The notes under the pieces were generated by a model. The model did not search any database. It was not told the origin of the DNA and saw only the letters and a list, made by a program, of their open reading frames with translations. Positions 1 through 64,000 of a stretch of 64,000 nt of DNA are shown piece after piece. Within the stretch, counting starts at the first letter, position 1. Every line of letters starts with the position of its first letter. Both the position numbers and the translations under genes were made by a program. Origin of the DNA: Orbicella franksi (Eukaryota); NCBI GenBank assembly GCA_964199315.1, contig OZ116702.1:8928001-8992000 (forward strand). The letters are read 5' to 3'.

Positions 1-3000
1 ATTTTTGCGAATTTCATAAGTGTGGTTTTCCAGTACATAAGTCATGAGTTGGTCAATCTGCTCTCCAGTGTACTTTCCTCGCTGTATGTCTGGAAACACC
101 ATTTGGCAGAGTAACTCAGTTGGCGTTAGAATCTTGACGTCTAAAAGAACTGCTAAAGTCTTGGAATCGTGCTCGGTAATGTCAATCAGCTCTCGCAGAG
201 GTGGAACCGGAAGAGAATCAGCAACCGTTGCACAAAGAACCTCCTCCTTTGATACGAACTTCTTGGACAGCGTCTGGAAAATGGGAAGCGAACACAGAAG
301 ATTGTACTCCGCTTGTCCCACAGATGACCGTCTCACACGGGCCAGAAATGACCTGAGGAGGTGCTTGTCGTTGGTAGATAACATCGTGCACACGATTTCT
401 GAAAACCTTCCAGCTGCTGCCATCTGGCTAGAGGAACACGCCATTGCTTGCAAAACGCCTTGTACAGAAGGTGAATGTACAAACGTCCCCAAGACAGCGG
501 GATGGTGTCTTAAATAGGCGGGAAAATCATTCATGATGATTAAACCAAGCTTCCTTAAAACATTCGTCAGTGAATCGTCTAGGCAATCATAACTTAGGGA
601 TTTGACAACAACTTTTGAAGGGCTGCAAAGTCGAACCAAGGTTACAGACGTTTGTGTCATGTCTAGTGGAATCAGAGGTAGTTTTCCAAGTCTCTGAATA
701 TCTTCCTCTGTGGTGAAATGTTCTTGAAGATATCTCCAGACAACCTTGATCCAGTCTCTTGGAGGATGGTTGTGATTACTGTCATCGGGGTACCACGGAA
801 CGGTATTACCCCTACTCCACTCAGGTGGTAGGGCCTCGCAAAGAAGAGATGGTACATCTTCCTCGCACAATAGCCGTAATTGCGTATCTTCTGTCAAACA
901 AACATAACAACATAGTGACGGTCTCCGTCGTAAAACACTTAATATTAGGACGTTTTTCACCATAATGTTGTTATGCCAACGGAAAAGAATTAAATGATAA
1001 ATACCGACATGCTTCAGTTGTCTTTGTTACAATTTTGGTAAGCTTATTCGTTGTAAGACCGTTCTGCTTTCCACTGTGCCATACGACTTATGAAAGGAAT
1101 GCCATTAACTACTTTAGATAGTAAAATAAAGAATAACCAATTGCTGGGTAAGATATAACCATACTCGTATCCAAAAAAACATTATACCTTGGTCAGCTGC
1201 ATCTTCCAGCTTCCTAATGACGTCCCCATCGACTGTGTCATCAATGAAACGGTGTCCTAGACCAGGAAAAAGTTCTCGGGGATGATGAGGCGAGCAAATA
1301 TAAATTTTCTCTCCCCGATATGAAAATGTTGTGAAGGCGCCATTGGAGAGGGGCAACAACTTCAAGCCGCAGAGTTCGTCAAATTTGCGGTCTTTAAGAC
1401 AAAACTGAAGAAGTAGTAGTTTCTCTCGTCTATTAAGGTTCTGGTAACAAGAAGGGACTTGCTTCAGTGCTGCTCTTGTGCCACTGGGTGTGATATTCTT
1501 TACAGAAGCCCCTGCATAGCACAAAATGGCGTCTGCGACATGACTCGGCACTGAGACGACAGGCACATCAGCTGCTAGTAACACTCGCTGAAGCAGCTCT
1601 TTAGGTTCATCTCTAGACAGCAGGTCAAAGACGACTTTCTGTACTGTCAGCCACTGACCAAGATGTGCTGGGGTATAAACAACTTTTTTCTGCAGTAGCA
1701 GGGTAAACAATGGTTCTTTTATCTTCTCCCACTTTGGGTCAATGGAGCTGATATCTGGCCATGCCCTGCAAGAAACAAATAAGCGTAACACTTCATCAGA
1801 TTCCTGGTTTCGATACCAGTATAGCAAGCAATGCTCTTTCCAATATATACTACAGCCTTGTAGACATTTTTGAAAATACATCATTTCTAAGCGCAATTTC
1901 CGCCGCTCTCTCAGCTCTCGTGGGTTCAGAGAACAGCGCCTGCAAATCAAGCCTAATTAAATTGTGAAAAAGAGAACTTCGATGCACTACATACTCCGTG
2001 TTTGAATAAAATAACGTTTTTCAACAAGTCTGGATTACTGCCACACGTCAAATAGTTCCACAAACTACGCTTCGTGGAAAGAACATGGGTACAAAAATAC
2101 TTAAGACATGTCATGTGCTTTCAACCAGGGATGACTTCTGAGCATAGAATTAACAATCTATAACTCACGTGAAAGCACGTTTCAGGACCAGCAACAACAA
2201 ATATTTCACTGTTGGAGATATATTTATCCAAGCGCAAGACAGTTATTAACCGAGTCACTGCCCTGAAAAAATGACACTTACTTGAAGATGGCTGTCTTTG
2301 GTACGAAAAATGATTTCTCGTTAATGGCTTCCAAAATCATCGTGGTATACGCTCTGGGTATGGCTTCCCCGAGAAGATACCTGTTCCATAGTAACGACTT
2401 GTCCGTCAGCTGCCGACCACAGGTCTCCCGATCCTCTTGATCCGCATTTGGAGATTTGATATAACGCCTGTTCTGACTCAAAGCAAAGAAGCCGTTAACG
2501 TGCACTGGCAAACCTGTCAAGCTCCTCTTTTGCACCGGCAGAGGCAAGAAGCAAAACACGTGGCCTTTGATGTCGGGCATTTGCAGTTTCGGACCTGTTG
2601 GCAGTGCCATGGCGACACCTACCATAGGTAGATAGTTAAGCTCTTTATCTGTCATCAGCCTCTTAAACCCCATAGAAACCTCCCCTCCACAAAAGTAATT
2701 GGTAACTAGGAAAGAATGCTGCTTCACGTGCGAGCCTAACTTTACTGTCTCTATCGTGACAGGGTAGGTTACAGTGACAGATTCCATCATCACTTTTCCA
2801 GGTTTGAACTTTGAGAGAAACTCCTTTCTCTTCCCTCGAACTATTTGGAGACTTTGATCGGCGATTCTCACTTGAAAGGTCCTTTCAGGATCAGACTCTG
2901 ATTCTTCTCTAACATACAGCTCGATCGATTCAAGGTGTTGAAGAAACAGGAGAACCAAGTGAGCGTCAGCCTCAAAACTTTCAAACAGTGTATCCATCTT

Positions 3001-5829
3001 CTCAGCAGAGTAGAGTGTTTGTGACAACTCGGATGGTCTGGTCCTGAAAGGGAAACGGAACAAGGTGCCATCGTAAAATCCCTGGGAAAAAACATCTTCC
3101 GTACAGTCAAAGATTCCCTTGTAAGGAAGGAACTGGTCTGGTATTTCGTCCATCTCTGCGCGATCTTCATTGAGTCGCCAGTGCTTTCCTGTTCTTCTGT
3201 GGCGCTTGTCAGAAAAGTGAACACCATGAGGGTCAATGAAGCCAATTTGGGAATCACTGAGTAAACTTGGTAAATCTGAGATAGAAGAGCAACACAAACA
3301 TAACTAAGAGGACCACTATGGTGTGAAGGACTTTCTTTTAAGTAACGGAATATTGAATTCAATCTTGAAACAATTGTTTCACTTTTCTAAACAAAATAGG
3401 CCAATTTAATTAACTAAAAAAAGACAAGAATTGTAAAGGTTATTTTGCAGCTGTGTTGGAAATTCACCAGGTTCAACAAAAAAATGTGAGTCTTTAAGCA
3501 GGCTCTCAGCTTCAGTTATGATTAAGAGGGCGCATACGTGTAGACCTAGTTGTTACTCTGTGAACCTTAGATTTTCTGTGATTTCATATCACTGGATGAT
3601 TTTTAGTATGGCGTTCAAAAAATTTGGTCGTAGATCTCTGAAAAATTTTTTGCGTTAAGTAGGTTTGAAATGTAAATCTTTTAGTCCCGGTCCAAAACGC
3701 CGTTCCACTCATGTGCCGAACCAAGCTTGATTAAGTTTTGCTTTAGAGCGACTTTGGAGCGACGGCTGGTTCAGACGGCGTACTTGCGTCGAACTTAATT
3801 CGGGAAGCCATTGGTGACAATTTTCGACGAGAGAATATGCGTTCTGAATTCAAGAACTCTATCCAAATAGAAAAATTGTCACTAACATTTCGCTGTTATA
3901 GCAGTATTTAGGGAAGCAAATTCAAACTCTAGGTTCAGTATTTAGGCAGGTTTTCTCCTGGTTAATTCGACTTGTTAAAGGGAAATCTCATAAGCTGGGC
4001 TATTATCACGAAGAAAAACCAAAAAATGAATTTGCCCTAAAGAAACTCGCTTAAGATTGTACTGGAGATGCATGTACCTGTCATGTGAAATACAGACTTG
4101 AATCCAAGACCAAAACGGCCGACTTTCATTGGATCTTCCACTTTGATGCTATCACAGACCAGTCGAATACCCCTCCAGTCTTCTCTTGTAAACCGTGCGT
4201 TGTTGTAAGCGTAAAGCGCTGGGCCCTGTTTGAACATTTCAATAAAATATATATTAGGAAGGCTTCTGTGGAACTAGGAAGAGATTTGTGTCTTTTTGTA
4301 GCGTCCCCAAACGCAACTTGTTGAGTCATGTCAACTATAACAGTATGCCGTACATATTTGTAGATTTTCCCCTTACCTTATCAAACAACATCAGAGAAAA
4401 TTTAGGCTTTTTAAGCATTATATATGTCTACGTATCTATAGTTTCTCCAAAATAAAATTGGACGGATGCACATTTTTCTGCTTAAAGATCTGTTTGTCAG
4501 ACATAAACGGAAAGCATATTCTTCCGTTCAGGAAAGTGCCAAGGACACGTTCCTGTGCATGACATTGAAAACCCAAAAACCCAAAGGCTTTGACCATTAA
4601 ATTAGAAGAAACCCTAAGTATTATGCCCTAGCTTTGTCAAAAATTACCGTGAAACTAAATTGAGCTGTCATTGTGAGTTATCCATTTATAGGGATTTTGG
4701 ATTTTACCACAATAATCACTCTGTCTTGAACAATTCAGTGAGTTTCTTCTACGTAGTGTTAGCTGCGCATTTTAAATTTTGCGAATTTGCAACGTTACTA
4801 AGTCATAATTTTGGTTCGTTTCGATCAAAAATGAGACAAAACCATGTGTTCACCTGAAATTGTGCGAGGTCCTCATCAAAAAGATGTTCTGTGTCATGGC
4901 TGTGTTTGTCGTGCAAGAACTTCACTCGACTGGCATTTGCATCCTCAGCATTTTGAATCAGTTCCTAGACACGAGAGGCGTGAGAGATAAACAATCGCAA
5001 AAATACATATACTAACACAGGAAAATCTTTAACATCTAACGCCAAAGTGTATAAATTTCTGATATACAGACTGTTAGAAAAATAAACGAAGAGTTCTCGT
5101 ACAGAGCCTCGCTGGTTTTTATTACCGATGAATGTGAAGTTGACGTTGTAATTCAGTTCTTAATTGATCCACGGTAGTCCAGTTCGCTATGTGTTGTACT
5201 GTTAGCTACTGTTTGGCAGAAGGATTATATCGTGATATTTGCAAACCTTACTATAGCAGGCAGAAGGAAGGAAATTTTGCTTCCCTGCAATCTGGGCGAT
5301 TTTTGCACAAAAGTAATGTGCTTTACCTTCAGTATCTGTCCATCATCAGGATACTGATCTAGGATGGACCTCAACTGTTGGATCAGTGATGGCTGAATCA
5401 AGTCAAACCCATCGTCATCATTGTTCGCTGAGCAACAAATTAAAGAAACAAACATTAGAGGTAAGTTTCAAATAAGCCAAACACAAAGAGCTGGCCTAAG
5501 AAATATCGGAACTACTATAATTTCCCTCCCGATGGATTGAGGCTTTAAGTTACTTGCAGACAAGAATGTCACTTCAGTTTACATTTCTGATTATCTGATA
5601 ATTCTGGTACATTAGGACTTAAACATGCACCACATGGACTATGGATTGACGAAAGACGTCTCTATAACCTACGCGTAGGCACTAATTCCTGAAAGCTATC
5701 ATTTAAGAATGCTTCCTTACGCGAGTTATTGAAAACGGTCCCAAAATATGGAAAACTAAAAATGAAAGACCCCAACGTTTCTTACTGAAGTCGTTGTTCA
5801 TTTACATGGCATGAGTTATACCTACCCAT
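1..5829 (-). CDS. SACS: Sacsin-like gene, copy 1, 5' part (runs off the left edge). Exons: 5826-5829 (ATG G, inferred), 5327-5427, 4854-4964, 4078-4225, 2282-3275, 1188-1765, <1-890
   Basis: GT-AG exons with compatible phases and the same lengths as copy 3 (101, 111, 148, 994, 578 nt). They encode the SRR1 Hsp90-like motifs [12 protein letters not shown] and [14 protein letters not shown], plus [10 protein letters not shown] and [10 protein letters not shown]. The frame of 1-890 is open and matches the start of the copy 3 giant exon. Exon 1 is inferred from phase and a conserved ATGG|GTAGGT. Confidence 0.9.
3684..4053. mobile_element. Truncated PIF/Harbinger-like MITE in intron 4 of copy 1
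   Basis: Starts TTA|GTCCCGGTCCAAAACGCC at the same site as the full element at 18349-19083. The right half is deleted (403 bp in copy 2 coordinates) at a TTA microhomology. Confidence 0.8.
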
Positions 5830-7690: not shown

Positions 7691-10600
7691 GCACTGCATA
7701 TTTAAAAGCTGCGTAAACAGGGTGTTATTAAACAGAGGAAGAATAATATGAGATCTACTTGACAATTTCTGCTATTACCCAGTCTCCTTAAGATGGTCGT
7801 CTACATCGCAAGAGAACAGAAACGCCGACCCAACTGGGAAGAGCTCGAACACATGATTAAACGTAATTTTAGTGGTTTGCTGGAAGATGATTTCGACCCC
7901 GTTAGGATCACCATGAGGCATGTTGGATTCCCATCTGAATATTACCAGGTAAAGATATTTGAAAATATTTGTGGAAAAAAAAAAAACGAGCACTAGAACA
8001 CTAACATAACTGTGACTTCTTAGTATTGTTAGTTCAGTCCCGAAGCGGCTAAATTGTGACATACTTTACAACTCGATACCAAGCTGAAGGAAGGAAACGT
8101 ATAGTATATCATTTTTTTTTTTCTTTCTTACGTCGAAGTTTTCAAAATTATACGCAAAGTGGCTTAAGTATAAAACTCTAAAATTTAAAAGAGGCCAATG
8201 TCCCAGACTATTGGGGTGGATCACGGCGGAAAGGTTTCGCAACCTGAAATTTGATACTATACATGACATCTTCGTCAGTTCGTGGAAAGGAAATCTATCA
8301 CCTGTCAGTCGTAATGTTCGAATAACTTAATTTTGTCTTCAGAGCAGACCTCAACTTACGATAATAATGGGAAAAGTGAAGAAAGAAGTCTTTTCGGCTG
8401 TTTCCAGCGTTATGATTTTGGGAATTAAGGTTACTGTATACCTTCAAAGGTGTCTCGCGTCCAAGTTATGAAGCGCGTCCGGTTTAAACTGTAGATACCC
8501 AAACCCCTATATCAAATTAAAGCTTATGGGGCTGGCTATCAAATGTACCGAGCATTTTGAAACAAAATAAATTGTCGAATTTTGCATAACCACTGAATGC
8601 GAGCGTCCGAATCACCTTTTGAAAGCTACAAGTCAAAGTGAATTTTGTTTTCCGCCAATCTAATTCTTTCCTTGGTTTCAATACACCACGCGATAAAAAA
8701 ACGCGTCTGCGTTTTGCCATATTCAATTGCAGCAAAAAAAGTACAGAACATTTTCGAAATAGAATTCAGACACAATTTCTTTGGTTCCTATGTTTAACTA
8801 ACAACTGTCCAAATTTGTGTGAAATCAAACGAATTCCTGTGTACCAAATTCGTGACATCCGTATAGGTAATTCCCGCGAAAGTAGTCTCGGTTTTAATTG
8901 CATACACACCATAGGGCTGTTATTCTGGAGTGAAACTTCTACCTTCGGCGAAATTAAAACATAACACCGCCGTTTCTCCGCCAATATTTCGTCTTTTTCA
9001 ATCTTTTTTTTTTTTTTCTCAGAAATTAGAGATTTCTCTTCCACAGTTACTTTGACCCATAAATCCAATAAATCTGAAGGTATATGGACTTAATCCGTAC
9101 GTGAAATTTTAAAATACGCCGCTTAAGAGCGTGGTATTGATGAAATTATAATACAGACTTCACGATGGGCTGAACTACAATCAAAACGAGTTCCAAGTAG
9201 CTATGCTCGTTCTTTCGTTTAGTTCAAAACATTAAGTATAGAGCGTTTTCATGGCGCCCTGGTTGCTATTCTGAAACAATGGGAAATGTTTGTATGAGAA
9301 ACTAACGCCATGCAACATGCTAAATATGGCTGCCGTGACATCAGGCTCAACTCCGCAATTTTAATTCAGCGCTGTCATAGCTAGTAGTTACTGACTATGG
9401 CGCTGTTTTGAACTCGCCATTGATAAAACGAATTAGTTAAATGAATCCGCCAACGTCATTTAGCAATCGAATGAAATAATTCCACCCATTGCATGGTTCT
9501 TGAACAAATGATATTAAAATATTGATTCGACTCATGGCAGGAAATGCCGGAAGACCGTTCCGGCGATAAGCAATAAACCGGAGTGCCGAAACCTTTTCCC
9601 AAACAGGAGAGCGTACAAAAGCATACAAAGCAAAGTATTATCACAACAGAATTTCGTTTTACCTTGAAAGTCGAGAATGTAGCAACAAGAAAGGGTTTTT
9701 AGCAGAACTTCCGTGTCAGTCTGCACCAACAATTCAGCTGCTTTCATGCGAACCGAGTATTCCTTCACTCGTCACGCTTTGTTACGTCATTTGCACGTGA
9801 AAAGGGTGCCTGGCCGGCATCTATATTCAATATGATTTGTCCTTGGCCTTTTAGCCTCAAGTTTAAAAATTTACGTGTTTATCCAATAAATAGTAAAAGT
9901 GGTCTTTGAACCCTTTTTGATAGCATATAGCAAACTACAGACGCCTGCGTGACTTAATTAATAGAGCATTGCGAGATCGTCCAAAGTCCATTGAAGTTTG
10001 CCGGGCTCCATAACTATTCGTCTCTAAACTGTACATATGAAAACTCAGAACACAAAGATCGAATTCTTTACGAAAACAAAAATGCCGTACACGCTAGTAA
10101 GCTGTCTAATTTTAAGAGTTACAACTTACTTTTCTGTCGAAGTGCATGCAAAAGTTTCGCAGGGGTATTGTAATTATTCCACACGTCTGTGTCTCTTCAA
10201 TACATGCGTCCTGTATATTTTGGGCAGGTGAAAATAATGTTTGTGTTACACTCTGTGACCCACTCCCAAAGATCTCCTACTTTATTCCACTTTCAAATAC
10301 TCCTAATTGTAGTTTCTGCGTTTTAAAAAGTCTTAGGAAAACGGCTCCTGACACCCTCACGTGTCGTGCGAAAATGGCTTCAAAGATATCATGGAAGATT
10401 CTTGAATTTGTTTATTTTCTCTTTCCCAGAAAACAAATTCATTTGCATGACAACAGCAATTTGAATATGAAATGTGAATATCAAATGTGACAGTCGTGTC
10501 ACACAACAAACCCTTAAACATCAGGCCCTTGCATACACTGAAATTATAAACAAAATTCTGGAATCTGATTGGTTACCAGAACTCCCTATTTTTAACCAAA

Positions 10601-47000: not shown

Positions 47001-50000
47001 GATCAGCTGCATCATTCAGCTTCCCAATGACGTCCCCATCGAGTGTTTCGTCAAGGAAACGGTGTCCTAAACCAGGAAATAGTTGTCGTGGATGATTACG
47101 CGAGCAGATATAAATTCGCTCTCCCTGATCTGAAAATTTTGTGAAGGTCCCATTGAAGAGGGGCAACAACATCACGCCGCAGAGTTTGTCATATTTGCGG
47201 TCTTTAAGACAAAACTGAAGAAGGAGTAGTTTTTCTCGTCTAACAAGGTTCTGGTAACAAAAGGGGACTTGCTTCAATGCTGCTCTTGTGCCACTGGGAG
47301 TGATATTCTTTACAGTGGCCCCTGCATAGAACAAAATGGCGTCCGTGACGTGACTGGGTACTGAGACAACAGGCACATCAGCTGCTAGTAATACTCGCTG
47401 AAGCAGCTCTTTAGGTTCATCTTTAGACAGCAGGTCAAAAACGGCTTTCTGTACTGTCAGCCATTGCCCAAAATGTGCCGGGGTGTAAACAACTTTTTTC
47501 TGCAGTAGCAAGTGAAACAATGGATCTCTTATCTTCTCCCACTTTGGGTCAATGGAGCTGATGTCTGGCCATGCTCTGTAAGAAACAAATAAGCGTAAAA
47601 CTGCAGTAGTTCCCTCGTTTTAATACCAGCATAGCAAGCAAGACTCTTCTCAAGAGCCATGCTTGCTATACTGCCTGTGCATGCCTTGTAAACATTTTTG
47701 AAATGACATTTATTTCTAGACGCAATATCCGACTTAGTTCCTCTCCAAGAGTACCGAGCGTTGGCTCGGTGAACAGCGGCAGCCAGTTTTAACTTCAATG
47801 CTCTACATACTCCGTGTTTGAATGAAATAACATTTTTTAACAAGTCCAGATTACTGACAAACGCTAAAAAGCACGACAAACTACGCATTCGCGATCGTGG
47901 AAACAAAATGGGTCCAACAATACTAAGAGCCTATCATGTGCCAACAACCATTGATTACTTCTGGGCATAGAATCAACAATTTATAACTTACGTGAAAGCA
48001 CGTTTAAGGGCCAACACTGAACGAATATTTTGTAGTTGGAGGTATACTTATCCAAGAGCATGACAGTTATTATCCGAGTCACTTCTCAGACAAAATAACA
48101 CTTACTTGAAGATGGATGTCCTTGGTACGAGAAATGATTTCTCGTTAATTGCTTCCAAAATCATCGTGGCATACGCTCTGGGTATGGCCTCCTCGAGAAG
48201 ACATCTGTTCCATAGTAACGACTTGTCCGTCAACTGCCGACCACTCGTCTCCCGATCCTCTTGATCCGCATTTGGAGATTTGATATAACGCCTGTTCTGA
48301 CTCAAAGCAAAAAAGCCATTAACGTGCACTGGCAAACCTGTCAAGCTCCTCTTTTGCACCGGCAGAGGCAAGAAGCAGAACACGTGGCCTTTGATGTCGG
48401 GCGTTTGCACTTTGGGACCTGTTGGCAGTGCCATGGCGACACCCACTGTGGGTAGATAGTTAAGCTCTTTATCTGTCATTAGTCTCTTAAACCTCATAGA
48501 AACCTCCCCTCCACAAAAGTAATTGGTAACAAGGAAAGAATGCTGCTTCACGGGCGAGTCGAGCTTTACTGTCTCTATCGTGACAGGGTAGGTCACAGTG
48601 ACAGATTCTGTCATCACTTTTCCAGGTTTGATCTCTGCGAGAAACTCCTTTCTCTTCGCTCGAACTATTTGGAGACTTTGATCGGCGATTCTAACTTGGA
48701 AGATCCTTTCAGGATCAGACCCTGACTCTTCTCTAACATAAAGCTCGATTGATTCCAGGTGTTGAAGAAAGAGGAGAATTAAGTGGGCGTCAGCCTCAAA
48801 ACTTTCAAACAGTATTTCCATCTTCTCAGCAGAGTAGAGTGTTTCTGACAACTCGGAGGGTTTGGTCCTAAAAGGGAAACGGAACAAGGTGCCATCGTAA
48901 AATCCCTGGGAAAAAACGTCTTCCGTACAGTCAAAGATTCCCTGGTAAGGAAGGAACTGGTCTGGTATTTCGTCCATCTCTGCGCGGTCGTCATTGAGTC
49001 GCCAGTGTTTTCCTGTTCTTCTGTGGCGCTTGTCAGAAAAGTAAACACCATGAGGGTCAATGAAGCCAATTTGGGAATCACTGAGTAAACTTGGTAAATC
49101 TGAGATAGAAGAGTGAAAGAAACATGACTCAGGGGACCACTATACGTTGTCAAGTGCTTTCATTTAAGTAACGGAATATTGAATTCAATCTTGAAACAAT
49201 TGTTTCAATTTTCTAAACAAAGTAGGCCAATTTAATAAACTAAAAGAAGACAAGAATTGTAAACGTTTCTCTTTGCAGCTATGGTCGTTTTTCATCAGGT
49301 TCAATGAATAAATGTGAGTCTTTAAGCAGGGTCTCACCTTCAGTTATGATTAAGAGGGCGCATATGTGTGGACCTATTTGTCACTCTGTGAACCTTAGGT
49401 TCTCTGTGATTTCATATCACTGGATGATTGTTTTTTTATGGAAATATAAATACGTGATACGGTCGTAGATCTCTGAAAAATTTTTTGTGTTAAGTAGATT
49501 TGAAATTTACATCTTTTACCTATGTACCATATAAGCGACGTATATAAACACTAAAATTTATTAAGATTGTACTGGAGATGTATGTACCTGTCATGTGAAA
49601 TACAGACTTGAATCCCAAACCAAAACGGCCGACTTTCATTGGATCTTCCACTTTGATGCTATTACAGACCAGTCGAATACCCCTCCAGTCTTCTCTTGTA
49701 AACCGTGCGTTGTTGTAAGCGTAAAGCGCTGGGCCCTGTTTGAACATTTTAATAAAAGGTATATGAGGAAGTCTTCTGTGGCACTGTATCTTTTTGTAGC
49801 GTCCCCAGACGCAACTTGTGTAGTCATGTCAACTATAACAGTATGCTGTAGATGTTGGCAGTTTTCCCCTTACCTTATCTAACAACATCAGAGAAAACTT
49901 TAGGCTTTTTAAGCCTTAAAGATGTCTTTGTATCTATAGTTTCTCCAAAATAAAAATGGTTGGATGCACATTTATCTGGGTAAAGATCTGTTTGTCAGAC

Positions 50001-51304
50001 ATAAACGGAAACCATATTCTTCCGCTCGGGAAAATGCCTAGGACACGCTCCTGTGCCTGACATCGAAAAGCCAGAAACCCAAAGGCTTTCACCATTAAAT
50101 TAGAAGAAATCCTAAATATAATGCGCTCTCAAAAATTACTATGAAACTGAACTGAGCTGTTATTGTGAGTTATCCATTCATAAGGTTCTTGGATTTTAGC
50201 ACAATAATCACTCGACCTTGAACAATTCAGTGAGTTTTTTCTACGTGGTCCTAGCGGCACATTTTAAATCTTGCGAATTTGCAGCGTCATGATTTTTGTT
50301 CGTTTCGATCAAAAGTGAGACAAGACGATGTGTTTACCTGAAATTGTGCGAGGTCCTCATCAAAAAGATGTTCGGTGTCATGACTGTGTTTGTCGTGCAA
50401 GAACTTCACTCGACTGGCATTTGCATCCTCGGCATTTTGAATCAGTTCCTAGACACGAGAGACTCGAGTGATCAACAATCGCAAAAATACATATGCTACC
50501 ACTGGAATATCTTTAACAACGGAAGCAAAACTGTATAAATTTCTCATACACAGCCTGTTAGAAAAATAAACGAAGAGTTCTCGTACAGAGCCTTGCTGAT
50601 TTTTATCATGAATGTGAGGTTGACGTTGTAACTCAGTACTTAATTGATCCATGGTAGCCGGTCCAATATGCTATGTGTTGTATTGTTTGGCAAAAGGACT
50701 ATGTCGTGAACTTGCAAACCTTACTGTAGCAGATGTAAGGAAGGAAATTTTGCTTCCCTGCAATCTCAGCGATTTTTGCACAAAAGTAATGTGTTTTACC
50801 TTCAGTATCTGTCCATCATCAGGATACTGATCTAGGATGGACCTCAACTGTTGGATGAGTGATGGCTGAATTAAATCAAACCCATCGTCATCTTTGTTCG
50901 CTGAGCAACAAATTTAAAAAATAAAACAGACATTAGAGGCAAGTTTCAAAGAAACCACACACAGAGACCTGGCCTGAGAAATATCCGCAGTAACATAGTT
51001 TCCCTCCTGAATGATCGAGGCTTTAAGTTACTTGGGACAAGAATGCCACTTCAGTTGACATCTAATTATCTGATAATTTTCGTACATCCGGACTTCTATA
51101 TGCACCACATGGACTATGGATTGACGGAACGCGTCTCTGTAACCAACGCGTAGGCATTAATTCCTCAAAACTATCATTTAAGAATGCTTCCCTGCGCGAG
51201 TTATTTAAAACACCCCCAGAATATAGAAAACTGAAAATGAAACACACCCGGATTTCTTACTGAAGTTATTGTTCAGTTATATGGCATAGTTTATACCCAC
51301 CCAT
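34821..51304 (-). CDS. SACS: Sacsin-like gene, copy 3, complete but with one in-frame TAG (37343-37345). Exons: 51301-51304, 50800-50900, 50338-50448, 49588-49735, 48106-49099, 46998-47575, 35492-46695, 34821-35099. 13,419 nt = 4472 codons plus stop
   Basis: All junctions are GT-AG and phase-compatible. Three SRR Hsp90-like modules ([48 protein letters not shown]), a J-like domain ([10 protein letters not shown]) and a HEPN domain ([18 protein letters not shown]|[19 protein letters not shown]). It may be a nonsense allele or a young pseudogene. Exon 1 is inferred. Confidence 0.9.
35492..37342 (-). CDS. SACS: Copy 3 exon 7 segment after the internal TAG: linker, J-like domain and start of HEPN
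   Basis: Same frame as the 3134-aa ORF ([20 protein letters not shown]). High identity to the copy 4 ORF 62207-64000. Confidence 0.9.
37343..46695 (-). CDS. SACS: Copy 3 exon 7 main ORF: SRR1 C-terminal part, SRR2 and SRR3
   Basis: Uninterrupted ORF of more than 3100 codons with two complete GHKL motif sets and the sacsin motifs [15 protein letters not shown] and [15 protein letters not shown]. Confidence 0.95.
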
Positions 51305-52366
51305 GAGCAAGATTCCAGATTTTCTGCAAATAGCTTCTTGCTGTTCCTTCACCTGATAATCATCTAAATAAGAGAACAATTAAGAAATAAAATCAGCGCG
51401 CTTTGGAGCCATATTGAACATTCAAGCACTGTATATTTTCAAGCGACGTAAATATTCCGCGACACACACAAGTGTTAATTTTTAATTGAGAAGAAAGTGT
51501 AACCGGTTAGGCACCGCTGGATCTTCTTCATTGTTATAGGAAGGCCAAAATCCTGCTGTTAAATTATAAATACTGCATATTTTGCACCTTTGAAACACGT
51601 CTCGCGTCTCGTCTTTCAAATTTTACAACCCAGATTCTGTTTGAAACCTTGCAAATATCTATCAAACTACGTTGCTCTGGAAAATTAACAGGGTCACTGA
51701 AAACGAGCGCCGTTAACCCACGCGTGAAATTATCACGGGGCTTTTAAGCAGCGTGGCGCCGAAAAATAACCCAGATTAAACTCCTTCTGAAACGATGGGC
51801 GAAACTGCTGTCAAAATGAGTTTCAAGTAGCTATGTTCGGCGATTTTTTTAATCCACAACATTCAATGTAGAGCGTTTTCATAGGGCCCTGGGTGCTGTT
51901 CCGTAACACCAGGAAATGTTTACCAAAGAAAAAAAGAACTCATTTTCCAAAGGAGAGAGTCAATATGGCTGCCATGCCATCGAAGAAGGCTAGACTCTTC
52001 AATTTTAATTCAACGGTGTTTTGAGATGACCATTAACATAAGTTTTGTAAAATGAGTTAACCATTGTCATTTAGATATCGTATGAAATATTTCCATCATC
52101 GCACGGTTCACAGACAAATTATATTAATTACATACTGATGCGACTCGAGATAACAATGTCGCCCGAAAGCGGGAAAACCATTCCGGTGTTCGGCTATAAA
52201 CCGGAGTATTGAAACCTTTTCCAACGCAGGAGTGTGCGCAAAAGCATGCAAAGCATAGTGTTATCACAACAGAATTACGTGTTACCTTGAAAGTCGAGAA
52301 TATAGCAACAAGAAAGAGTTTTTTCGCAGATCTTCCGTGTCAGTCTGTACCAACGATTCAGCTGCG

Positions 52367-52422
52367 TTCTGAGAATCGAGTCAAATTTCCGAGAAACTCC
52401 TTCGACACGCTCTGTTACGTCA
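52367..52422. promoter_or_regulatory. Proximal tandem GAS pair plus CRE-like site, about 1.1 kb upstream of the copy 3 ATG
   Basis: TTCTGAGAA 52367-52375, 11-nt spacer, TTCCGAGAA 52387-52395, TTACGTCA 52415-52422. Confidence 0.55.
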
Positions 52423-54753
52423 TTTGCCCATGGGAAATGTGCTTGGCAACGATATTCGATATGATTTAGCCCTGGCCTTTTAGCCCTTAAGCTTAAAAAT
52501 TTATTTGTTCAGCCAATAAATAGTAAAAGTGCTGTTTGGACCTTTTTTTGATAGCATATATCTAATTTGTCGAGCATGACATCTCCTTGATCGCCGAAAG
52601 TCCTTTGAAGTTTGCCGGGCTTCACAAGTATTCCTTTCTAAACTATACATCATGCGAAATCTTAAAACGCGAAGATCTAACTCTTTACAAAAGTAACAAT
52701 GTCGTACACGAATGTACGGTGCCTAGCATTTCTGGGGTTTACAAGTTTACTTTTCTGTCAAACTGCATGCAAAAGTTTCGCATGGGATATTGTAATTATA
52801 CAACACGCCTGTGTCTGCTCACCGTTTTTTTTGGAAGGTTTAAAAAATGTTTTTGTTACACTCTGTGACTCACTACGAAAGATCTCCTACCTTATTCCAC
52901 TTTCAGATGTTCGTAACTATAGCTCCCGCTTTTTTACAACTAGGAAAACGGCCCCTTCTACCTGCACAGGCCGTGTTTATATGGCTACGAAAATATCATC
53001 AAAGATTCTTGAAGTGTTTTATTATCTCTTTCCTAGAAAGCACATTCATTTGCATGACAACAGCAATTTGAATGTGAAATGTGACAGTCGTACGAAATAA
53101 CAAACCCTTAAACATCAGGCCCTTGCAGACACTGAAATTAATTTTACGATTCGTCATAACTATACTGACAAAATTCTCGAATCTGATTGGTTACCAGCAC
53201 GCTCTAATTCAGGAGCGCGACCAGATAAGGAGTCCAATAACAACGTATTCAATAACAAGCGCTGTTTATTTTTTAGTTCCTCCCGGTGACTCAGTACTCC
53301 TCTATATTGAAAAAAACCGTTCAGATAAATCGTAAACAGTCTAAACAACCTTTGCTTTGTCGGAATATTTATCTTGATTTTGTTTGAAGTTGTGATTGAT
53401 GAATTGTTAACAGGAATTCTTGTCGTCCAATTCTCTCTGTAATCCTACTTGTGATTGTTAAAACAAATCAGACTGTCTCCCGCTTTTTGTTAATCACTCG
53501 TATGATTACAGTCCGAATTGGACTTCACTCCGGTTCATATCACCATAACGAACTGTTTCCACTTCTCAATAAAGAGATTTCAGTTTCTGAATTTCATCGT
53601 TTGAGATATAAGGCATCTATCATTCTGACCAACATTTAACTGAGTAATATTTATCTCTTCCATTATGCGTTCGAGATTTCTACGAAGTAATAGTTCAGTG
53701 ATGAGATGGTTTTGGTAGAATTTAAGAAAGTGCCTTCCAAGTAATCATTTTTAATTCTTCCTCTACATTTCGGTATTGTTAAATATCACCCTTTAGCAGA
53801 AACGCTTGCTTATAGCAAGTGGCTTGAATTGAGAATCTTTTGTAATGTTGATCTGATCCAAGATTCTACTGCTGCTATAAACTCACAAGGGCAAAAATCA
53901 CCTTCACAAACACAACTGCAGTAAACAATACTTACTTTTGCCATTGAGAATTTACTGAGTAAACAGTATTTCGCAGTTTCTCGATCACCGCCGCGTTCGA
54001 AGACTTAACATGCTTATACACAATCAAAATGAAGGTTTAAAGCTGACGACATCTTTTCTCCACTACTCCGGCCGTATTTGATTTGAATTGCTTCTTAACG
54101 AAGGGTATATTAAGACAGAATGTGAAGCTTGCAAAAAATGTCAGTAAGGGAAACTTTTTCTAGTAGCTATATCCTGTATTTTGAATTGAGTTTATTCCTA
54201 ACGGTTGACTTTATTCCTTCGTTAAATTATATATTTCGACATGTTCATACAATTACGAATTACATTTCAATGTAGAAGACGGGAATAAAAATGAGGCTCG
54301 GCGTGGTCATTTAAGAGCGTTTCAGAAAACATTTTAGCGATCATTCACCACTACTTAAACTGAGCTGTGTTTTTTAATCGATCTTTAGCAATGGTTCCCT
54401 CCGTTTTGAAACTTTCACCAGCTCTTTAAACCAAGAGGTTGCTGAAACGGACTGCGATCGGCCGATCGAGCCACTTGTTCAAAGCATTTCTTCGGTTAAA
54501 AAATTATAGTTTCTTAGGCTCAGTTACTGAATGGCTGGTATATAGAAATATTTCCTGTCATCAACTGACTCTGCCACATTCGTCCATGGCAAATTAGGAG
54601 AAGATAACTCCGTCCATTTTGCAGAACTTGTCGTTGTTGCAGTTTGTCAATCGTTTCAATTACTGTCGAACATACATAAATTTATCACGAACACCGTGAC
54701 TATTGATGTGAAGTAAATTTGAAATAATTCATACTTGAACTGCGGTGGTAGAT

Positions 54754-55518: not shown

Positions 55519-55620
55519 TTCCAAGAATTGCCAATGATTCTAGGAATTGCTTTTGTAGTTTCCAAAAATATCTTTCCGAGAAACCAAGATTCTTATCACA
55601 TGATAACATGCGTGACGTAG
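55519..55620. promoter_or_regulatory. Distal triple GAS cluster plus CRE-like site, unit C first duplicate
   Basis: TTCCAAGAA 55519, TTCTAGGAA 55538, TTCCGAGAA 55574, TGACGTAG 55613. Confidence 0.55.
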
Positions 55621-58659: not shown

Positions 58660-58762
58660 TTCCAAGAATCGTCAATGATTCTAGGAAACGCTTTTGTAGT
58701 TTCCAAAAATATTTTTCCGAGAAAACAAGATTATTATCACATGATAACGATGCGTGACGTAA
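58660..58762. promoter_or_regulatory. Distal triple GAS cluster plus CRE-like site, unit C second duplicate
   Basis: TTCCAAGAA 58660, TTCTAGGAA 58679, TTCCGAGAA 58715, TGACGTAA 58755. Confidence 0.55.
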
Positions 58763-60646
58763 GTATTTGTTTTTCTTTTTTGTTTTTGACCACATCCCGT
58801 ATGTAAGATGGCGAGTAGAGCAGCTTGTCAGTGGCGCGTCGTTTAAAAAAAGTGGCCGCGGTGTCATGCATTGAAAATGATTTTGCCTGTGTATTTGGTT
58901 TGGCGTAGGCGGAGGGGGAAAATAGGTTTGTGCAGCGGATTTGGGTAAAAATGTTTTCATGACCACATATTCAACCAATATTAATCTGCACGGATTTGAA
59001 TTCTTTTTTTTTTTCTTTTTTTTTTTTTTTTTTGTGCAAACTAACGTAGAATAGGTATATTGATATATTTGGAGCACTTTGGATTAGTAACTATTGTCGA
59101 GGGTTAACCCATAATAGGGAACGTTCACCAAAAAATTTGTACAATCTAAAAGTCTAAAAATCTAAAAATACAATATTTCTTAATACTAATGGATAAAAAC
59201 TCTCGTTATGTTGTTGGGAGGGGAATCAGAGGTTTTAAAACCTTCCTGTGATCTCCAAAAATACTCTAGATTGTCGGATTTTCCGGCCTAGAAATTGCAC
59301 CTGAGTTTCGTAGGCCAACTCTTTTCCATGACCGCTTAAGACCGAGACTGAGTGAATCGAGTCACACTGAGAGGAGAGAGAGCCCTAGAGCTTCTTGCAT
59401 TGTAGGTTCAAAACTTTGTATCGGAAACAAATGGATCAAATGCATAATTTGGCATTTTTGCTCCATCTGGGCCTTTCTTCTACCTGCCACCCGCCCCATC
59501 ACGTCTAGGAAACTGTTTTTTTAGAAATCAAGCAAGAATGTCAAATAAACGCAAATTGGTTTTATTTTTGCTTCGTTTTTCTAACAAACGAGCCTTGCAT
59601 ATGGCCTGTTTCACTGTGTGCTACAGAGATTTTAACTAAATTTATTTCATTATATTTGTTTCTGGCATCGTTAAATTCAACTGAACGTTTATAATTCAGA
59701 CTTATTCGACAAGAGAAACACAACCCTTTTAGACCAGGCTTCTCTAGGGAAAAATGAATTAAGCTTTCGAAGTTGTGTGCTTTGTATTGCAGCCTAAACA
59801 AGTTCATTGTTTTAAAAATAGCTCGAGCTTATTTAGCTTGGAAACATCAAAACCGCCGAAAACTCTTTGGCATTGTGTTTTAACTAAACCGCTGTAAAAA
59901 GACTACAACATCACTTAGAAACACAATAAGAGACGTAGACTAACGGTACACGTCTCCAAACATTTGCTAGTATAAAACTATTTTTTACTTGAAAATTGCC
60001 ATTGAAAATTAGAACATATTTGTTTATTTATACCATTAACCTAAAGGTGTATCTCTCTTTACCTTGTAACTATCTCTACTGATTCCTCTGTTTGACAGGC
60101 ATGTATTCAAGCTTATTTTGAGTAATTACAGCAGTTCTATAATCTTGCATTTACATTTTACTTCAGGTATTCTGAAGTATGAATAACTTCGTATATTCTA
60201 CTGAAAATTATCTACGTAGCAAGCTGTATCTATAACGAGTAAATAGGAATTAGGTTCGTGTTTGAAAGTAGGAAGAACTTTGGTAACTGTGAAATTACGC
60301 GCCTATGTTTATTCCTGACTCACAAATTAGAATATAATCGAGCTATTGGGTCAAGAATCCTAAAGGCTCATGTTTTTACATAGTCTGTGAGTCAAAGGCA
60401 AGCCTAGGACACGTTCAAAACTATGCCCTCGATCTTACTGGTCAACAAGTTTAACTTTGCTAAAAAAAGGTAAATACGAAATGCAACGGCTGACAGGCAA
60501 TGGTATTTTATGTTGCCGGCCACTGTCAATATGGAAGCGTCCGCCTATTTGCCTGCATTGACGCAACTTCTGTTAGAGGCAAGATTTCTTTGCCTTCTTA
60601 AACGGTATAAAATAACTCAAACTAAGCTAATATCGTTTCTCTGAGA

Positions 60647-61506: not shown

Positions 61507-64000
61507 TTAGGGTATCCTGTCTTTGACTCGCATCAAAATATTCTCTGAAAGCTGTAGGGCCTGCTCAGCCATCTGGGCCGAGTAAACTTCGTTTGGGATC
61601 TTGGGGAAGGACACCTGATCTGGATAACGCATGCGCGCGGAACTAAGAACAAGTCTCTCTAGACTACATGCTAAGTCGGTTAATTGGGAGTCATTTAAAC
61701 CATCGCAGTTCTGATCCAAGTTGTGGACACTAGTCTTGTCAGCATCTATTGTGTATTGAGCCGCCTTTAGTGCCTTCTCTGCTGCCTATAGGAGAACAAA
61801 TCCATACAAAGTATTCAACGGAGGCACTGGTTACCAATTCTATTCACGGAGATGTTAGCTGTACTTGAACATATAATAAACAATGTTTTGTAAAGGCGGT
61901 TGAAGAGAGAACACTTTCGCACATTCATTCTTTTTTTTTTCTAACACGATAACTGCCTGGCTAATACTTCAAGTAAGAATTGATTCATTTCGCGGTCTTT
62001 TATTCTCGATCCAACTTGTTGCCTTTCAGTGGTATATTTCTTTTGTACATGAAAGTAACAAAGATTGATCAAATGGCAAGCAAAGTACATATCAATTATT
62101 TTAAAAAAAAACTTAAGAATGGGAAATTCCGAAGTTGAGTTTTTATAGCCTTATGAATATCATTGCGGGTCTCTTAAATAAGTCTAAAATGATCTTTACC
62201 GGCAAATTAACCAAACAAAGCCTTTCTTACCTGATGGCATTTAAAGCATACCCACTCAAAAGAAGGCCTTCTGGAATCAATTTCATTTGTACCGGCTGCA
62301 AGGTCAGCTTCAGCCTGTCTGAACCAACGCTTAGCCTCTTCAGGCTGCGGATTTCTAAGGCAGAACCTTGGAGGAATTTGACGTGATGACGATTCCAAGG
62401 AAACGTCCAAATTAGCGAGTCTTTCTTTGTACTCCTCACGCCGCGTGCCATGCTCTATTGCACGTGTTACCCAAGCATCAATATATTCGTCGTAAGAGCC
62501 ACCCAGTTGCGAGATTGTATTCTTGATGTGCTCAAACGCCTCTGAGCAGAATTCTTCATCTCCCAAGTTCTTCTCTGGGTGCCAACGTAGAATTAGCCGC
62601 TTCACGATTTGTCGTTTTTGTTCTTCTGGTAGTCTCCATGCATCCTCCAGTTGCTCTGAAATCTCTCCAAAAATCGCCTCTTTGTTTCTGTTTCTGGGGC
62701 GTTCTTTCTCCCTTTCAGATATATCTTGTATACGGTGGAATTTGTACAAGACGGCAGCATTGACCTCAATCGGTTCTTTGTCGTATCCAATGTTGATTTG
62801 GTACATCTTTGTCAAGAGGATAGCATCTTCATCCATCACTTCGACCTCCTTGATAATCACAGCGTAGATGTACGTAGCGACCCCTTCCTCGAGTTGGAGA
62901 CTCGGGTCATGTAGCTGATAACCCACATATTCCCCAGGTTCAAATTCCAAAAAGGCGTCATTCAGCAGATGATGCTCCTCGATTGGAATAAAGCCACCTG
63001 GCTCTGCATAAATGCCCATATCTGTTCCATCATAGGTGTCATCTCGTCGAATGCGCCTCCTATCCAGTAGAGGCCATATGTCACCAAGCGGACAATGCAA
63101 CATCTCAGGAATTAGTACCATTTTCTTTCCCAGAAGCTCACCATAAATCTCTTCAATTACCTGGGCTATCAAGGAGGCAGCGTTGCTCATTCCTGTTACA
63201 GAATTCAAATACACCTTCAACTTTTCCTTGCCAGACACCACAACTTTCTCTTGAAAGAATGGTACATCTTCCTCACTTCCGGAAATGAGTTGACCGTTGT
63301 GAAAGAGTGAGGTTTTAAGGCTTTCTACGGCACAAAGCTCTATGTTTCGAAGACCATATTCAATATCAGCGGCTATTCCTTCATCAAATTGCTTCTTCTG
63401 CGAGTCAACGTGTCGAACAATTCTGATAATGCCCTGTACAAATTGAGCAGACAAAAGCCTCGTCGTCAATGCACTGACAGCCCCACTTGTCACTATTGCA
63501 CCGTCGGTGAGTTTTTCTTTTACCACAGAGGACAGCATCACTGGTTGTAAAGGTGTAGGCAATTTCATCATTAGCTCTTCGTAGTTTGTCATGGCAGATT
63601 TTGGTCTGGCATCCAGCAGGCTAAGCTCAAGCACAAAACGTATGTTGAGCCTCGCGATCCTTGGTCCGTAAGCAGGTACATCATCGAAAACCAGCTCGGT
63701 GGACTTGTGCAAAGTCATAGGGATTTTTTTCAGAGGCTTATCAGAGGAGCGCGTTTCTGGAAACTTTGGTGGTAGGTACAGATATTCAGGAAACGTCGCT
63801 GGTAAGTACAGATTACATACTGCTGACGCTTCAACAGGATCGTCTTGAAGCCTTGCAAAGAAACCTTTCACTGCCTTGGAACACATTCTTATTTCATTTT
63901 GGTGCAATTTGTCATCCCGGCTACTTTCCTGCAACATCTCCAAAACCATGGCATAATGGGTAGCTCGAACAGCCTTGGAACAGCCCAGGTACTCAAACAA
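61507..64000 (-). CDS. SACS: Sacsin-like gene, copy 4, 3' end (runs off the right edge). Exons: 62231->64000 and 61507-61785. J-like and HEPN domains
   Basis: Open 590-codon segment colinear with copy 3 (35492-37260). Donor CATCAG|GTAAGA, acceptor CTATAG|GCAGCA, 279-nt terminal exon ending RVKDRIP*. Confidence 0.92.

What the first reader, a model, noticed from the sequence alone, without database searches (positions are those of the whole stretch)
1..64000. Tandem sacsin-like (3x Hsp90-like ATPase, J-like, HEPN) array evolving by birth-and-death: candidate STAT-inducible innate-immune effector system
Seen in sequence: four head-to-tail copies with paralogous intergenic DNA and no unique spacer (the junction block recurs at about 16200, 31500 and 58920). 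The copies are in different states: open, deleted, nonsense-carrying and open. They are mosaic in ancestry, have a hypervariable HEPN patch and carry repeated tandem GAS modules. Established: vertebrate SACS is a single-copy chaperone-like gene. GHKL/Hsp90-like ATPases coupled to HEPN or other nuclease domains recur in prokaryotic conflict systems, and many HEPN domains are RNases. Tandem birth-and-death is typical of immune gene families. Inference: this cluster works as a sensor-ATPase plus HEPN effector induced through STAT, rather than as a housekeeping chaperone.
Basis: partly seen in the sequence, partly recalled or inferred. Interest (0 to 1): 0.85.

Follow-up and report, generated by a model that had tools for sequence, protein, structure and literature searches.

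The report
Reshuffling cluster of coral sacsin-like genes
This stretch of a stony-coral chromosome is part of a row of giant sacsin-like genes that get copied, recombined with each other and sometimes broken; at least the complete one is switched on, but nothing here shows that they are STAT-controlled immune weapons.

Summary
On the minus strand the window carries the 5' third of gene A, a deleted relic B, a complete gene C (4,472 codons) and the 3' end of gene D. All encode sacsin-like proteins: three SACS/Tiamat-type ATPase modules, a J-like domain and a HEPN domain.

The row continues outside the window. There are 9 genes plus the relic on contig C5 between 8.50 and 9.03 Mb, and 18 genes genome-wide.

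- A and D are open. B lacks about 14 kb and its start codon.
- C has one TAG where A and D have CAG. The TAG allele occurs in several DNA runs, but four other runs read CAG. RNA contigs show C is transcribed and spliced.
- Mosaic ancestry is strong: synonymous divergence between neighbours jumps from about 0.06 to above 1 inside one exon.

- The HEPN "hypervariable patch" has high synonymous divergence too (ω 0.27), so it looks like an exchange tract, not diversifying selection.
- Overall ω is 0.27–0.38.
- GAS sites are not enriched once duplicates are collapsed, and the pair at C's transcript start is missing in A and D.
- These copies lack the canonical HEPN histidine.

The immune idea is already published for the family. 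This scan has only two unchecked first-reader notes on sacsin genes of this genome.

The parts
1..5829 (-). Gene A, 5' third. The start codon ends at 5826-5829. Coding exons are 5327-5427, 4854-4964, 4078-4225, 2282-3275 and 1191-1765, followed by the first 890 bases of the giant exon. The rest lies left of the window.
   Evidence: tblastn with P0013. Spliced CDS of 4,473 open codons. 99.2% amino-acid identity to D in the giant exon.
9616..9900 (-). Promoter and first non-coding exon region of gene A. The CRE-like TGACGTAA is kept, the distal GAS is deleted and the proximal site is changed to N4 spacing (TTCGCATGAA).
   Evidence: Alignment of five paralogous promoters.
17167..24438 (-). Relic B. 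Non-coding exons lie at 24355-24438 and 20905-20953. Coding exons lie at about 20391-20493, 19931-20044 and 19156-19306, and half of exon 4 at 17167-17686. The ATG is mutated to GTG. About 14 kb of gene body is deleted.
   Evidence: The 17167-18099 stretch is 95.6% identical to A.
16430..17166 (.). DNA joined to the broken exon 4 of B. It is homologous to the region 1.4-2.1 kb downstream of D's 3' end (59369-60117, 83%), which marks the deletion junction.
34821..52375 (-). Gene C, complete. Non-coding exons are 52292-52375 and 51301-51365 (the second ends in ATG G). Coding exons are 50800-50900, 50338-50448, 49588-49735, 48106-49099, 46998-47575, the giant exon 35492-46695 and the last coding exon 34821-35099. 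Total 4,472 codons.
   Evidence: Related-species transcript L027 mapped. Splice sites. Translation. RNA contigs with 0-4 mismatches per contig.
34363..34818 (-). Intron in the 3' UTR of gene C, starting 2 bases after the stop codon. The 3' UTR exon resumes at 34362.
   Evidence: Loose ends at 34819 in three RNA runs. Their sequence lies at 34333-34362.
35100..35491 (-). Intron that splits the HEPN domain of gene C (GT..AG).
   Evidence: A joint from 35098 to 35491 appears in two RNA runs and not in the DNA run.
37343..37345 (-). In-frame TAG at codon 3763 of gene C, where A and D have CAG. It lies upstream of the J-like and HEPN domains.
   Evidence: Four runs (3 RNA, 1 DNA) read the CAG allele on C-specific contigs. 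31-mers carrying the TAG allele are found in 6 runs from 4 studies, two of which may be the source sample.
43775..44512 (-). ATPase head of the second sacsin repeat (SRR2) of gene C. SRR3 lies at 40640-41365. SRR1 is split over 50335-50454, 49586-49738 and 48705-49106.
   Evidence: PF25794 hits. Motif I ELxQNAxDA at residues 36, 1396 and 2446. PADLOC TmtA E 4.1e-114.
35747..35926 (-). J-like domain of gene C, with HPE in place of the canonical HPD.
   Evidence: PDB 1IUR match. HPE in A, C, D and E against HPD in 12 other paralogues.
34824..35599 (-). HEPN domain of gene C, in two exons. It contains the conserved His (HNL) and RYPD, but no His 4-6 residues after the Arg. The variable patch spans about 34944-35066.
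52367..52395 (.). Two TTCN3GAA sites 20 bp apart, at and just upstream of the 5' end of the known transcript of gene C. The paralogous pair in B lies at 24430-24458.
53030..53038 (.). TTCN3GAA site about 660-690 bp upstream of the transcript start. It is conserved in C, A (10423-10431), D and Z, next to an ATGCAAAT octamer. In A, D and Z an HSE-like triplet sits beside it.
55519..55582 (.). Module of three TTCN3GAA sites plus a TTACGTCA site inside an array-specific intergenic block. It is repeated at 58660-58723, 31242-31287 (two sites) and 13632-13681 (two sites).
58922..58971 (.). Short junction block that recurs at 16199-16248 and 31503-31550.
61507..64000 (-). Gene D, 3' end. The last coding exon is 61507-61785, followed by the HEPN intron and the end of the giant exon from 62231. 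The rest lies right of the window.
   Evidence: The D unit is 98.84% identical to the A unit over 23,053 bp.

Best explanation
**What it is.** The window is a slice of a large cluster of sacsin-like genes in a stony coral. At least the complete gene C is expressed.

**The protein.** Each gene encodes a protein of about 4,470 residues. [quoted passage not shown]

**How the cluster evolves (shown).** It changes by tandem segmental duplication and by unequal crossing-over or gene conversion between neighbours. The 5' third of the gene and its promoter are exchanged among neighbours, while the remaining ~2,800 codons belong to anciently split lineages. Occasional decay also occurs: relic B, and a segregating nonsense allele in C. 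Most copies remain under purifying selection.

**What it does (inferred).** The proteins are ATP-driven stress or infection-responsive factors. Their paralogues have probably divided roles, as in fish and Acropora, where some family members rise and others fall after a viral mimic.

**What is not established.** Control by STAT and RNase action of the HEPN domain are not established. For the copies in this window they are less likely than not.
For: **Architecture:**

**Extent of the array**
- 18 genes genome-wide, with 9 plus a relic on C5 between 8.50 and 9.03 Mb.
- 16 of 18 are open from SRR2 to the end.

**Duplication**
- The A and D units are 98.84% identical over 23 kb, with dS 0.011.
- A-C dS is 0.13.

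**Exchange between copies**
- Z-C dS is 0.06-0.23 over the first ~800 codons of the giant exon, then 0.8 to saturation.
- In the first 400 codons C is closer to Z than to A. Further on it is closer to A.
- Z's 5' 10.5 kb, including introns and promoter, is 93.7% identical to C's.

**Decay:**

**Expression and splicing of C**
- 10 RNA runs hold 81-91% of its 31-mers.
- Spliced contigs are seen.

**Selection**
- ω is 0.38 for A-C, 0.32 for A-D and 0.28 for C against P0001.

**Phylogeny:** several ancient lineages are shared with Acropora, Montipora, Porites and Oculina, together with recent local duplicates.

**Literature on function:**
Against: - Function was not tested. No expression data under challenge were available for these particular paralogues.
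- ω of 0.3-0.4 fits a relaxed housekeeping protein as well as a defence protein.
- The A/D duplication could not be checked by read depth.
- Expression is shown only for C, and mostly in runs labelled as a sister taxon about 0.5% divergent from the window.
- Evidence that the TAG allele occurs in other samples rests on two sampled 31-mers.
Confidence: 0.7

Rival explanations
1. The cluster is a STAT-inducible innate-immune effector system. The ATPase modules sense infection and the HEPN domain acts as an RNase effector that diversifies under host-pathogen conflict.
For: - Homology to Tiamat.
- TTCN3GAA pair at C's transcript start, a conserved site near -680 and a triple module in array-specific blocks. 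A triple within 64 bp is expected about 0.01 times by chance (my estimate from the site density).
- Sacsin-like genes respond to poly(I:C) or virus in Acropora, oyster and fish.
- Death and TRADD-N fusions occur in other invertebrates.
- A candidate STAT locus exists at C5:20.345 Mb.
Against: - No GAS enrichment after collapsing duplicates.
- The pair at the transcript start is absent in the intact genes A and D.
- No ISRE or NF-kB site lies near the starts.
- The HEPN patch has ω 0.27 with dS 0.70.
- There is no canonical Rx4-6H in A, C or D.
- ω is at most 0.4 throughout.
- In Nematostella, STAT knock-down did not reduce cGAMP-induced genes (PMC8713801).
Confidence: 0.15
2. The genes are proteostasis co-chaperones like vertebrate sacsin, expanded in corals for heat and oxidative stress. 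Tandem copies reflect dosage or sub-functionalisation, not immunity.
For: - Same domain order as sacsin, with ATPase motifs intact.
- 12 paralogues keep the HPD motif.
- Purifying selection.
- Coral literature links sacsin to heat stress and bleaching-related traits.
Against: - A, C, D and E have HPE instead of the HPD needed for canonical Hsp70 stimulation.
- No heat-shock element lies at the transcript starts. In the whole window there are 2 matches against 1.5 expected.
- Copy turnover, chimeras and the reported extreme diversity in Acropora are unusual for a core chaperone.
- The ATPase clade is closest to a phage-defence protein.
Confidence: 0.3
3. The repeated copies are an assembly artefact: haplotypes laid in tandem.
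For: A and D differ by only 1.2%, which is within the range of coral heterozygosity.
Against: - There is no N in 164 kb around the window.
- A and D are separated by 49 kb that holds B and C.
- C is 7% different from both A and D, and Z and E are far more diverged.
- Identity rises gradually (90%, 97.8%, 98.8%) at the left edge of the duplicated unit, and the right flanks are 96% identical with indels.
- C-specific contigs occur in many independent runs.
Confidence: 0.04

Closest known systems
Vertebrate sacsin (SACS, the ARSACS protein)
   Same: - Three SACS repeat ATPase modules, then a J domain, then a C-terminal HEPN domain.
- A giant coding exon.
- HEPN and J match the solved human domains (3O10, 1IUR).
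   Different: - No N-terminal ubiquitin-like domain. The protein starts 35 residues before ATPase motif I.
- Multi-copy in tandem arrays rather than single-copy.
- HPE instead of HPD in A, C, D and E.
- The coral HEPN keeps a His (HNL) that the human protein lacks.
[quoted passage not shown]
   Same: - Same family and same domain set.
- NCBI names the homologues 'sacsin-like' in Oculina, Acropora and Montipora.
- Unusual sequence diversity.
   Different: - Those papers treat one gene as single-copy and explain its diversity by balancing selection.
- Here a multi-gene tandem array shows exchange of segments between anciently diverged paralogues. I found this described in none of the papers I read.
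Bacterial anti-phage protein Tiamat (TmtA) and its eukaryotic relatives (bioRxiv 10.64898/2026.09.30.754977; NO VEIN, 10.64898/2026.09.30.755639)
   Same: - Each coral ATPase module matches TmtA profiles (E 4e-114 over three stretches).
- The preprint already lists a type with three ATPases plus J plus HEPN and without the ubiquitin-like and XPCB domains.
   Different: - Tiamat has one ATPase module and a C-terminal PD-(D/E)xK DNase. The coral proteins have three modules and a HEPN domain, with no such nuclease.
- No eukaryotic member has been tested for antiviral activity.
Virus- or poly(I:C)-responsive sacsin-like multigene families of oysters and fish
   Same: Multi-copy sacsin-like genes. 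Paralogues respond in opposite directions, as in Acropora.
   Different: Inducibility of the genes in this window is unknown.
Immune gene families said to evolve by birth-and-death
   Same: Tandem duplicates of several ages, a relic and a segregating null allele.
   Different: - Strong homogenisation of the 5' third and promoter, which is concerted evolution.
- Mostly intact copies (16 of 18).
- No window-level signal of positive selection.

Membership tests
Sacsin family | Three SACS repeat (GHKL-type ATPase) modules | tested here: met
   PF25794 E 6.8e-163. Motif I and the Gly motif are present at three positions in C.
Sacsin family | J domain with an HPD motif | tested here: inconclusive
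   The fold-level match to 1IUR is clear, but Pfam DnaJ scores below its cut-off (17.1 against 27.8 bits). A, C, D and E read HPE. Twelve other paralogues read HPD.
Sacsin family | C-terminal HEPN domain | tested here: met
   Match to 3O10 at E 7.7e-18, and to the bacterial HEPNs 1O3U and 1UFB. The domain is split by a spliced intron.
Sacsin family (vertebrate type) | N-terminal ubiquitin-like domain | tested here: not met
   The CDS starts 35 residues before ATPase motif I, both in C and in the related full-length transcript.
Tiamat (TmtA) anti-phage defence | Tiamat-type ATPase module | tested here: met
   PADLOC TmtA E 4.1e-114. Profile positions about 11-344 of 1370 match three times.
Tiamat (TmtA) anti-phage defence | C-terminal PD-(D/E)xK nuclease | tested here: not met
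   The TmtA profiles match only in their N-terminal third. Pfam finds HEPN and no nuclease.
Catalytic HEPN RNases | Rx4-6H motif | tested here: not met
   A, C and D read RYPDQVSF. The neighbouring Z-type genes read RYPDRMH, which is Rx5H. Anantharaman et al. note that this HEPN-T family often lacks the His and has another conserved His elsewhere. That other His (HNL) is present here.
STAT-regulated genes | Conserved GAS elements in the promoter | tested here: inconclusive
   The pair at the transcript start is intact only in C and relic B. One site near -680 is conserved in C, A, D and Z. There is no overall enrichment after collapsing duplicates.
STAT-regulated genes | Induction that depends on STAT | not testable with these tools
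   Only a weak candidate STAT locus was found.
Birth-and-death multigene family | Duplicates of different ages plus pseudogenes, with lineage-specific gain and loss | tested here: met
   dS is 0.011 (A-D), 0.13 (A-C) and saturated (Z-type against A-type). Relic B. TAG allele. Species-level clades in the tree.
Birth-and-death multigene family | Little homogenisation between copies (independent evolution) | tested here: not met
   The 5' third and the promoter are exchanged between neighbours of different lineages.
Diversifying (arms-race) immune genes | dN/dS above 1 in a recognition or effector region | tested here: not met
   No 150-codon window exceeds 0.9 for A-C. One of about 73 windows of 100 codons exceeds 0.8 against P0001. 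The HEPN patch has ω 0.27. Site models were not run.

The most novel reading that the evidence does not exclude
The array may work as a shuffling system. A common 'head' is kept uniform across neighbours by gene conversion. The head comprises the promoter, SRR1 and the SRR2 ATPase, about 1,600 residues. It is recombined onto anciently diverged 'bodies' (SRR2 solenoid, SRR3, J-like and HEPN; about 59% amino-acid identity between types). This would produce new combinations of a Tiamat-related defence protein.

If so, the extreme trans-species 'haplogroups' reported at the Acropora sacsin-like gene could be imports from paralogues rather than simple long-term balancing selection. The family would then be an infection-responsive effector set in corals.
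Probability: 0.15. Interest if true: 0.75.

Novelty: new member of a known kind. Interest (0 to 1): 0.4.

Why it matters
- Sacsin-like genes are repeatedly flagged in coral heat-tolerance and population-genomic studies. Those studies usually treat the gene as one single-copy 'heat-shock co-chaperone'.
- In this coral the family is a multi-gene array whose members swap large segments. Read mapping, diversity scans and expression counts at such loci therefore need paralogue-aware handling.
- The array also offers natural variants for testing what the non-vertebrate sacsin tail does: HPD against HPE, Rx5H against no His, and a truncating allele.
- It could help test whether the Tiamat-related ATPase clade kept a defence role in animals.

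Tried and rejected
- **Transposon origin of the GAS-bearing intergenic block.** Rejected. All 12 genome matches lie inside this array, and the intergenic ORFs have no Pfam hit.
- **Assembly error as the cause of the TAG.** Rejected on limited evidence. 31-mers spanning the TAG allele occur in 6 runs from 4 studies, but only 2 words were sampled and two runs may be the source sample.
- **C as a fixed pseudogene.** Rejected. Four other runs read CAG on C-specific contigs.
- **Heat-shock elements.** 2 matches against 1.5 expected in the window, none at the transcript starts. An HSE-like triplet sits near -640 to -660 in A, D and Z only.
- **ISRE, NF-kB and TATA motifs near the starts.** None is conserved.
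- **Positive selection by sliding windows.** None convincing.
- **Six-frame Pfam search for STAT.** Nothing at default thresholds. There is a weak two-exon candidate at C5:20,345,500-20,347,021.
- **tRNA scan.** None found.
- **Literature.** One search returned nothing relevant. The main text of Weiss 2013 does not mention sacsin; the data are in its supplement.
- **Not attempted.** Structure prediction, HEPN dimer modelling and site-level codon models.

Full report
**Where the window lies.** The window is G000:C5:8928001-8992000 of a stony-coral genome. It has no N. All long open frames are on the minus strand.

**Anatomy of the copies.**
- Self-BLAST, tblastn with the window's own pieces and tblastn with full-length coral homologues define four head-to-tail units.
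- A 14.7-kb spliced transcript contig from a related coral (L027, which encodes P0013) gave the exon plan. There are two non-coding exons, the second ending in the ATG. Five small coding exons follow, then a giant exon of 11.2 kb and a last coding exon.
- Gene C (34821-52375) is complete, with 4,472 codons.
- Gene A has only its 5' 5.8 kb in the window, and gene D only its 3' 2.5 kb.
- With flanks fetched from the genome, both A and D splice to 4,473 open codons.
- B is a relic. It keeps the promoter, both non-coding exons, coding exons 1-3 and half of exon 4. At 17166/17167 it is joined to DNA that normally lies 1.4-2.1 kb downstream of a gene's 3' end. Its ATG is GTG.

**What the protein is.**
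- Pfam gives SACS (E 6.8e-163), a partial HEPN and a weak DnaJ.
- The tail matches the solved human sacsin HEPN (3O10) and J domain (1IUR), and the bacterial HEPNs TM0613 and TT1696.
- All three repeats keep ELxQNAxDA and the Gly-rich motif.
- There is no room for a ubiquitin-like domain.
- PADLOC's Tiamat (TmtA) profiles match each repeat (E 4.1e-114). This agrees with a 2026 preprint that puts sacsin in a Tiamat clade and lists this same architecture.
- A, C, D and the next gene E read HPE where 12 other paralogues read HPD.
- In the HEPN domain all paralogues keep HxL and RYPD. A, C and D lack a His 4-6 residues after the Arg, while the Z-type neighbours have RYPDRMH.

**Extent of the family.**
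- PF25794 hits 85 exons in the genome, corresponding to 18 genes with giant open frames.
- Nine of them plus relic B lie on C5 between 8.50 and 9.03 Mb. Other clusters are on C4 (three in tandem, plus one), C3 (two), C11, C1 and C5:22.15 Mb.
- From SRR2 to the end, 16 of 18 are open. C and one C4 gene are not.
- Homologues are abundant in scleractinians, and NCBI names them 'sacsin-like'.
- A FastTree of 63 sequences shows several old lineages shared with Acropora, Montipora, Porites and Oculina, together with recent local duplicates. A+D+C form one clade, and Z pairs with the gene at 8.77 Mb.

**How the array evolves.**
- In 164 kb without any gap, the A unit and the D unit are 98.84% identical over 23,053 bp. 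Identity rises gradually at the left edge, and the right flanks are 96% identical with indels.
- Giant-exon dS is 0.011 for A-D and 0.13 for A-C.
- Z is the gene left of A. Its 5' 10.5 kb (promoter, introns, small exons and the start of the giant exon) is 93.7% identical to C's. Its remaining body is about 74% identical to A, C and D at nucleotide level. The protein P0013, which is 89% identical to Z, shares about 59% amino-acid identity with them over that body.
- In 200-codon windows, Z-C dS is 0.06-0.23 for the first ~800 codons and then 0.8 to saturation. In the first 400 codons C is closer to Z than to A, and afterwards closer to A.
- C is therefore a chimera, and the array's 5' third is being homogenised across deeply diverged lineages.
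- The promoter type of C occurs only at Z, A, B, C and D, and partly at E.

**The nonsense codon.**
- C has TAG at 37343-37345 where A and D have CAG.
- I laid three RNA runs and one DNA run on 34700-40600. All four read the CAG allele, on contigs that are C-specific. One example has 3 differences in 1,897 bases, whereas A and D differ from C by 7%.
- A 61-base query in which every 31-mer spans the TAG allele is held by six runs from four studies. These carry two organism labels different from that of the RNA runs. Two of them may be the source sample, and only two words were sampled.
- So the allele is probably real and segregating or lineage-specific. It is neither an assembly slip nor a fixed pseudogene.
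- The same lay-out confirmed the HEPN intron (35100-35491, seen in RNA only). It also revealed an intron in the 3' UTR that starts 2 bases after the stop codon.
- The TAG lies upstream of two exon junctions, so the transcript would be expected to undergo nonsense-mediated decay. That is my inference.
- Ten RNA runs hold 81-91% of the words of a C-specific 2-kb stretch.

**Selection.**
- ω is 0.38 (A-C), 0.32 (A-D) and 0.28 (C against P0001).
- No 150-codon window exceeds 0.9 for A-C, and only one 100-codon window exceeds 0.8 against P0001.
- The HEPN patch differs at 14 of 41 residues between A and C, which is in the top 0.3% of windows. Its dS is 0.70 against 0.13 overall, giving ω 0.27. Windows near the start of the giant exon are equally divergent.
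- This points to a tract of older ancestry, not to diversifying selection.

**GAS sites.**
- TTCN3GAA occurs 49 times against 33.1 +/- 5.6 expected.
- After masking later copies of paralogous DNA the count is 29 against 21.6 +/- 4.4, reached by 22 of 300 shuffles.
- Two sites 20 bp apart sit at the 5' end of the mapped transcript of C, downstream of a conserved TGACGTAA.
- The pair is intact in C and relic B. It is half intact in Z. In A and D it is replaced by a 10-bp deletion and an N4 variant.
- One site near -680 is conserved in C, A, D and Z.
- A triple module lies in the array-specific blocks.
- These are reasonable candidates for a regulatory element, but they do not show STAT control.
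- A STAT gene is only weakly detected. In Nematostella, STAT knock-down left cGAMP-induced genes unchanged.

**Literature.**
- A conflict or RNA-level role for non-vertebrate sacsin HEPN domains was proposed in 2013, along with Death-domain fusions. TRADD-N fusions were reported in 2021.
- Sacsin-like genes respond to poly(I:C) or virus in oysters and lumpfish.
- In Acropora millepora, one of only 16 up-regulated clusters after poly(I:C) is sacsin-like (3.2-fold), while another sacsin-like cluster falls to 0.075-fold.
- Corals' sacsin expansion was noted at orthogroup level.
- An Acropora sacsin-like gene shows the highest nucleotide diversity in that genome. It was treated as single-copy and explained by balancing selection.

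**Verdict.**
- The evolutionary mechanism is well supported: duplication, exchange between copies and occasional decay.
- The immune reading is plausible at family level and already in print.
- Its specific elements are not supported for the copies in this window. These elements are STAT induction, a hypervariable HEPN effector and arms-race evolution.

Noticed in passing
outside the window: G000:C5 about 9,018,400-9,031,300 (gene E): The gene to the right of D matches full-length homologues only from about residue 1370 onward. It has no SRR1 exons nearby, and only a fragment of the shared promoter lies upstream. It looks like a two-repeat gene or a 5'-deleted one.
   Followed up: partly
window 35834-35842, and equivalent places in A, D and E: The J-like domain reads HPE in A, C, D and E but HPD in 12 other paralogues of this genome. 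The Asp of HPD is normally needed to stimulate Hsp70 (my background knowledge, not checked here).
   Followed up: partly
loci L011, L012 and the Z gene (C5:8.77, 8.83 and 8.89 Mb): The Z-type paralogues carry RYPDRMH (Rx5H) in the HEPN domain, whereas the A-type genes in the window lack the His. This gives a natural contrast for RNase tests.
   Followed up: partly
window 34363-34818: An intron in the 3' UTR of gene C starts two bases after the stop codon. It is seen as loose ends in three RNA runs whose continuation lies at 34333-34362.
   Followed up: yes
window 23872-24135 and 29124-29757: A 13-bp tandem repeat (about 20 copies) lies inside the first intron of relic B. A 169-bp repeat (3.8 copies, 96% matches) lies in the B-C intergenic DNA.
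   Followed up: no
window 52422-52429 and paralogous places: A CRE-like TGACGTAA about 45 bp upstream of the transcript start is conserved in all five paralogous promoters. This is better conservation than for the GAS pair. An ATGCAAAT octamer lies near -700.
   Followed up: partly
G000:C1:5463768-5473767 (L020) compared with the window genes: The C1 paralogue is about 99% identical to database protein P0022, while A, C and D find nothing closer than 86%. The C5 array may turn over much faster than dispersed family members, or its close relatives may simply be missing or withheld from the database.
   Followed up: no
G000:C4:10.08-10.17 Mb (L021-L023): A second tandem trio of sacsin genes belongs to a distant lineage. 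It has no HEPN intron and a larger first big exon. One member ends early, about 2,100 codons after SRR2.
   Followed up: no
G000:C5:20,345,500-20,347,021 (L034, L035): Two colinear exon-level matches to the STAT DNA-binding domain (E 0.005 and 0.17) are the only trace of a STAT gene found by the six-frame search.
   Followed up: no
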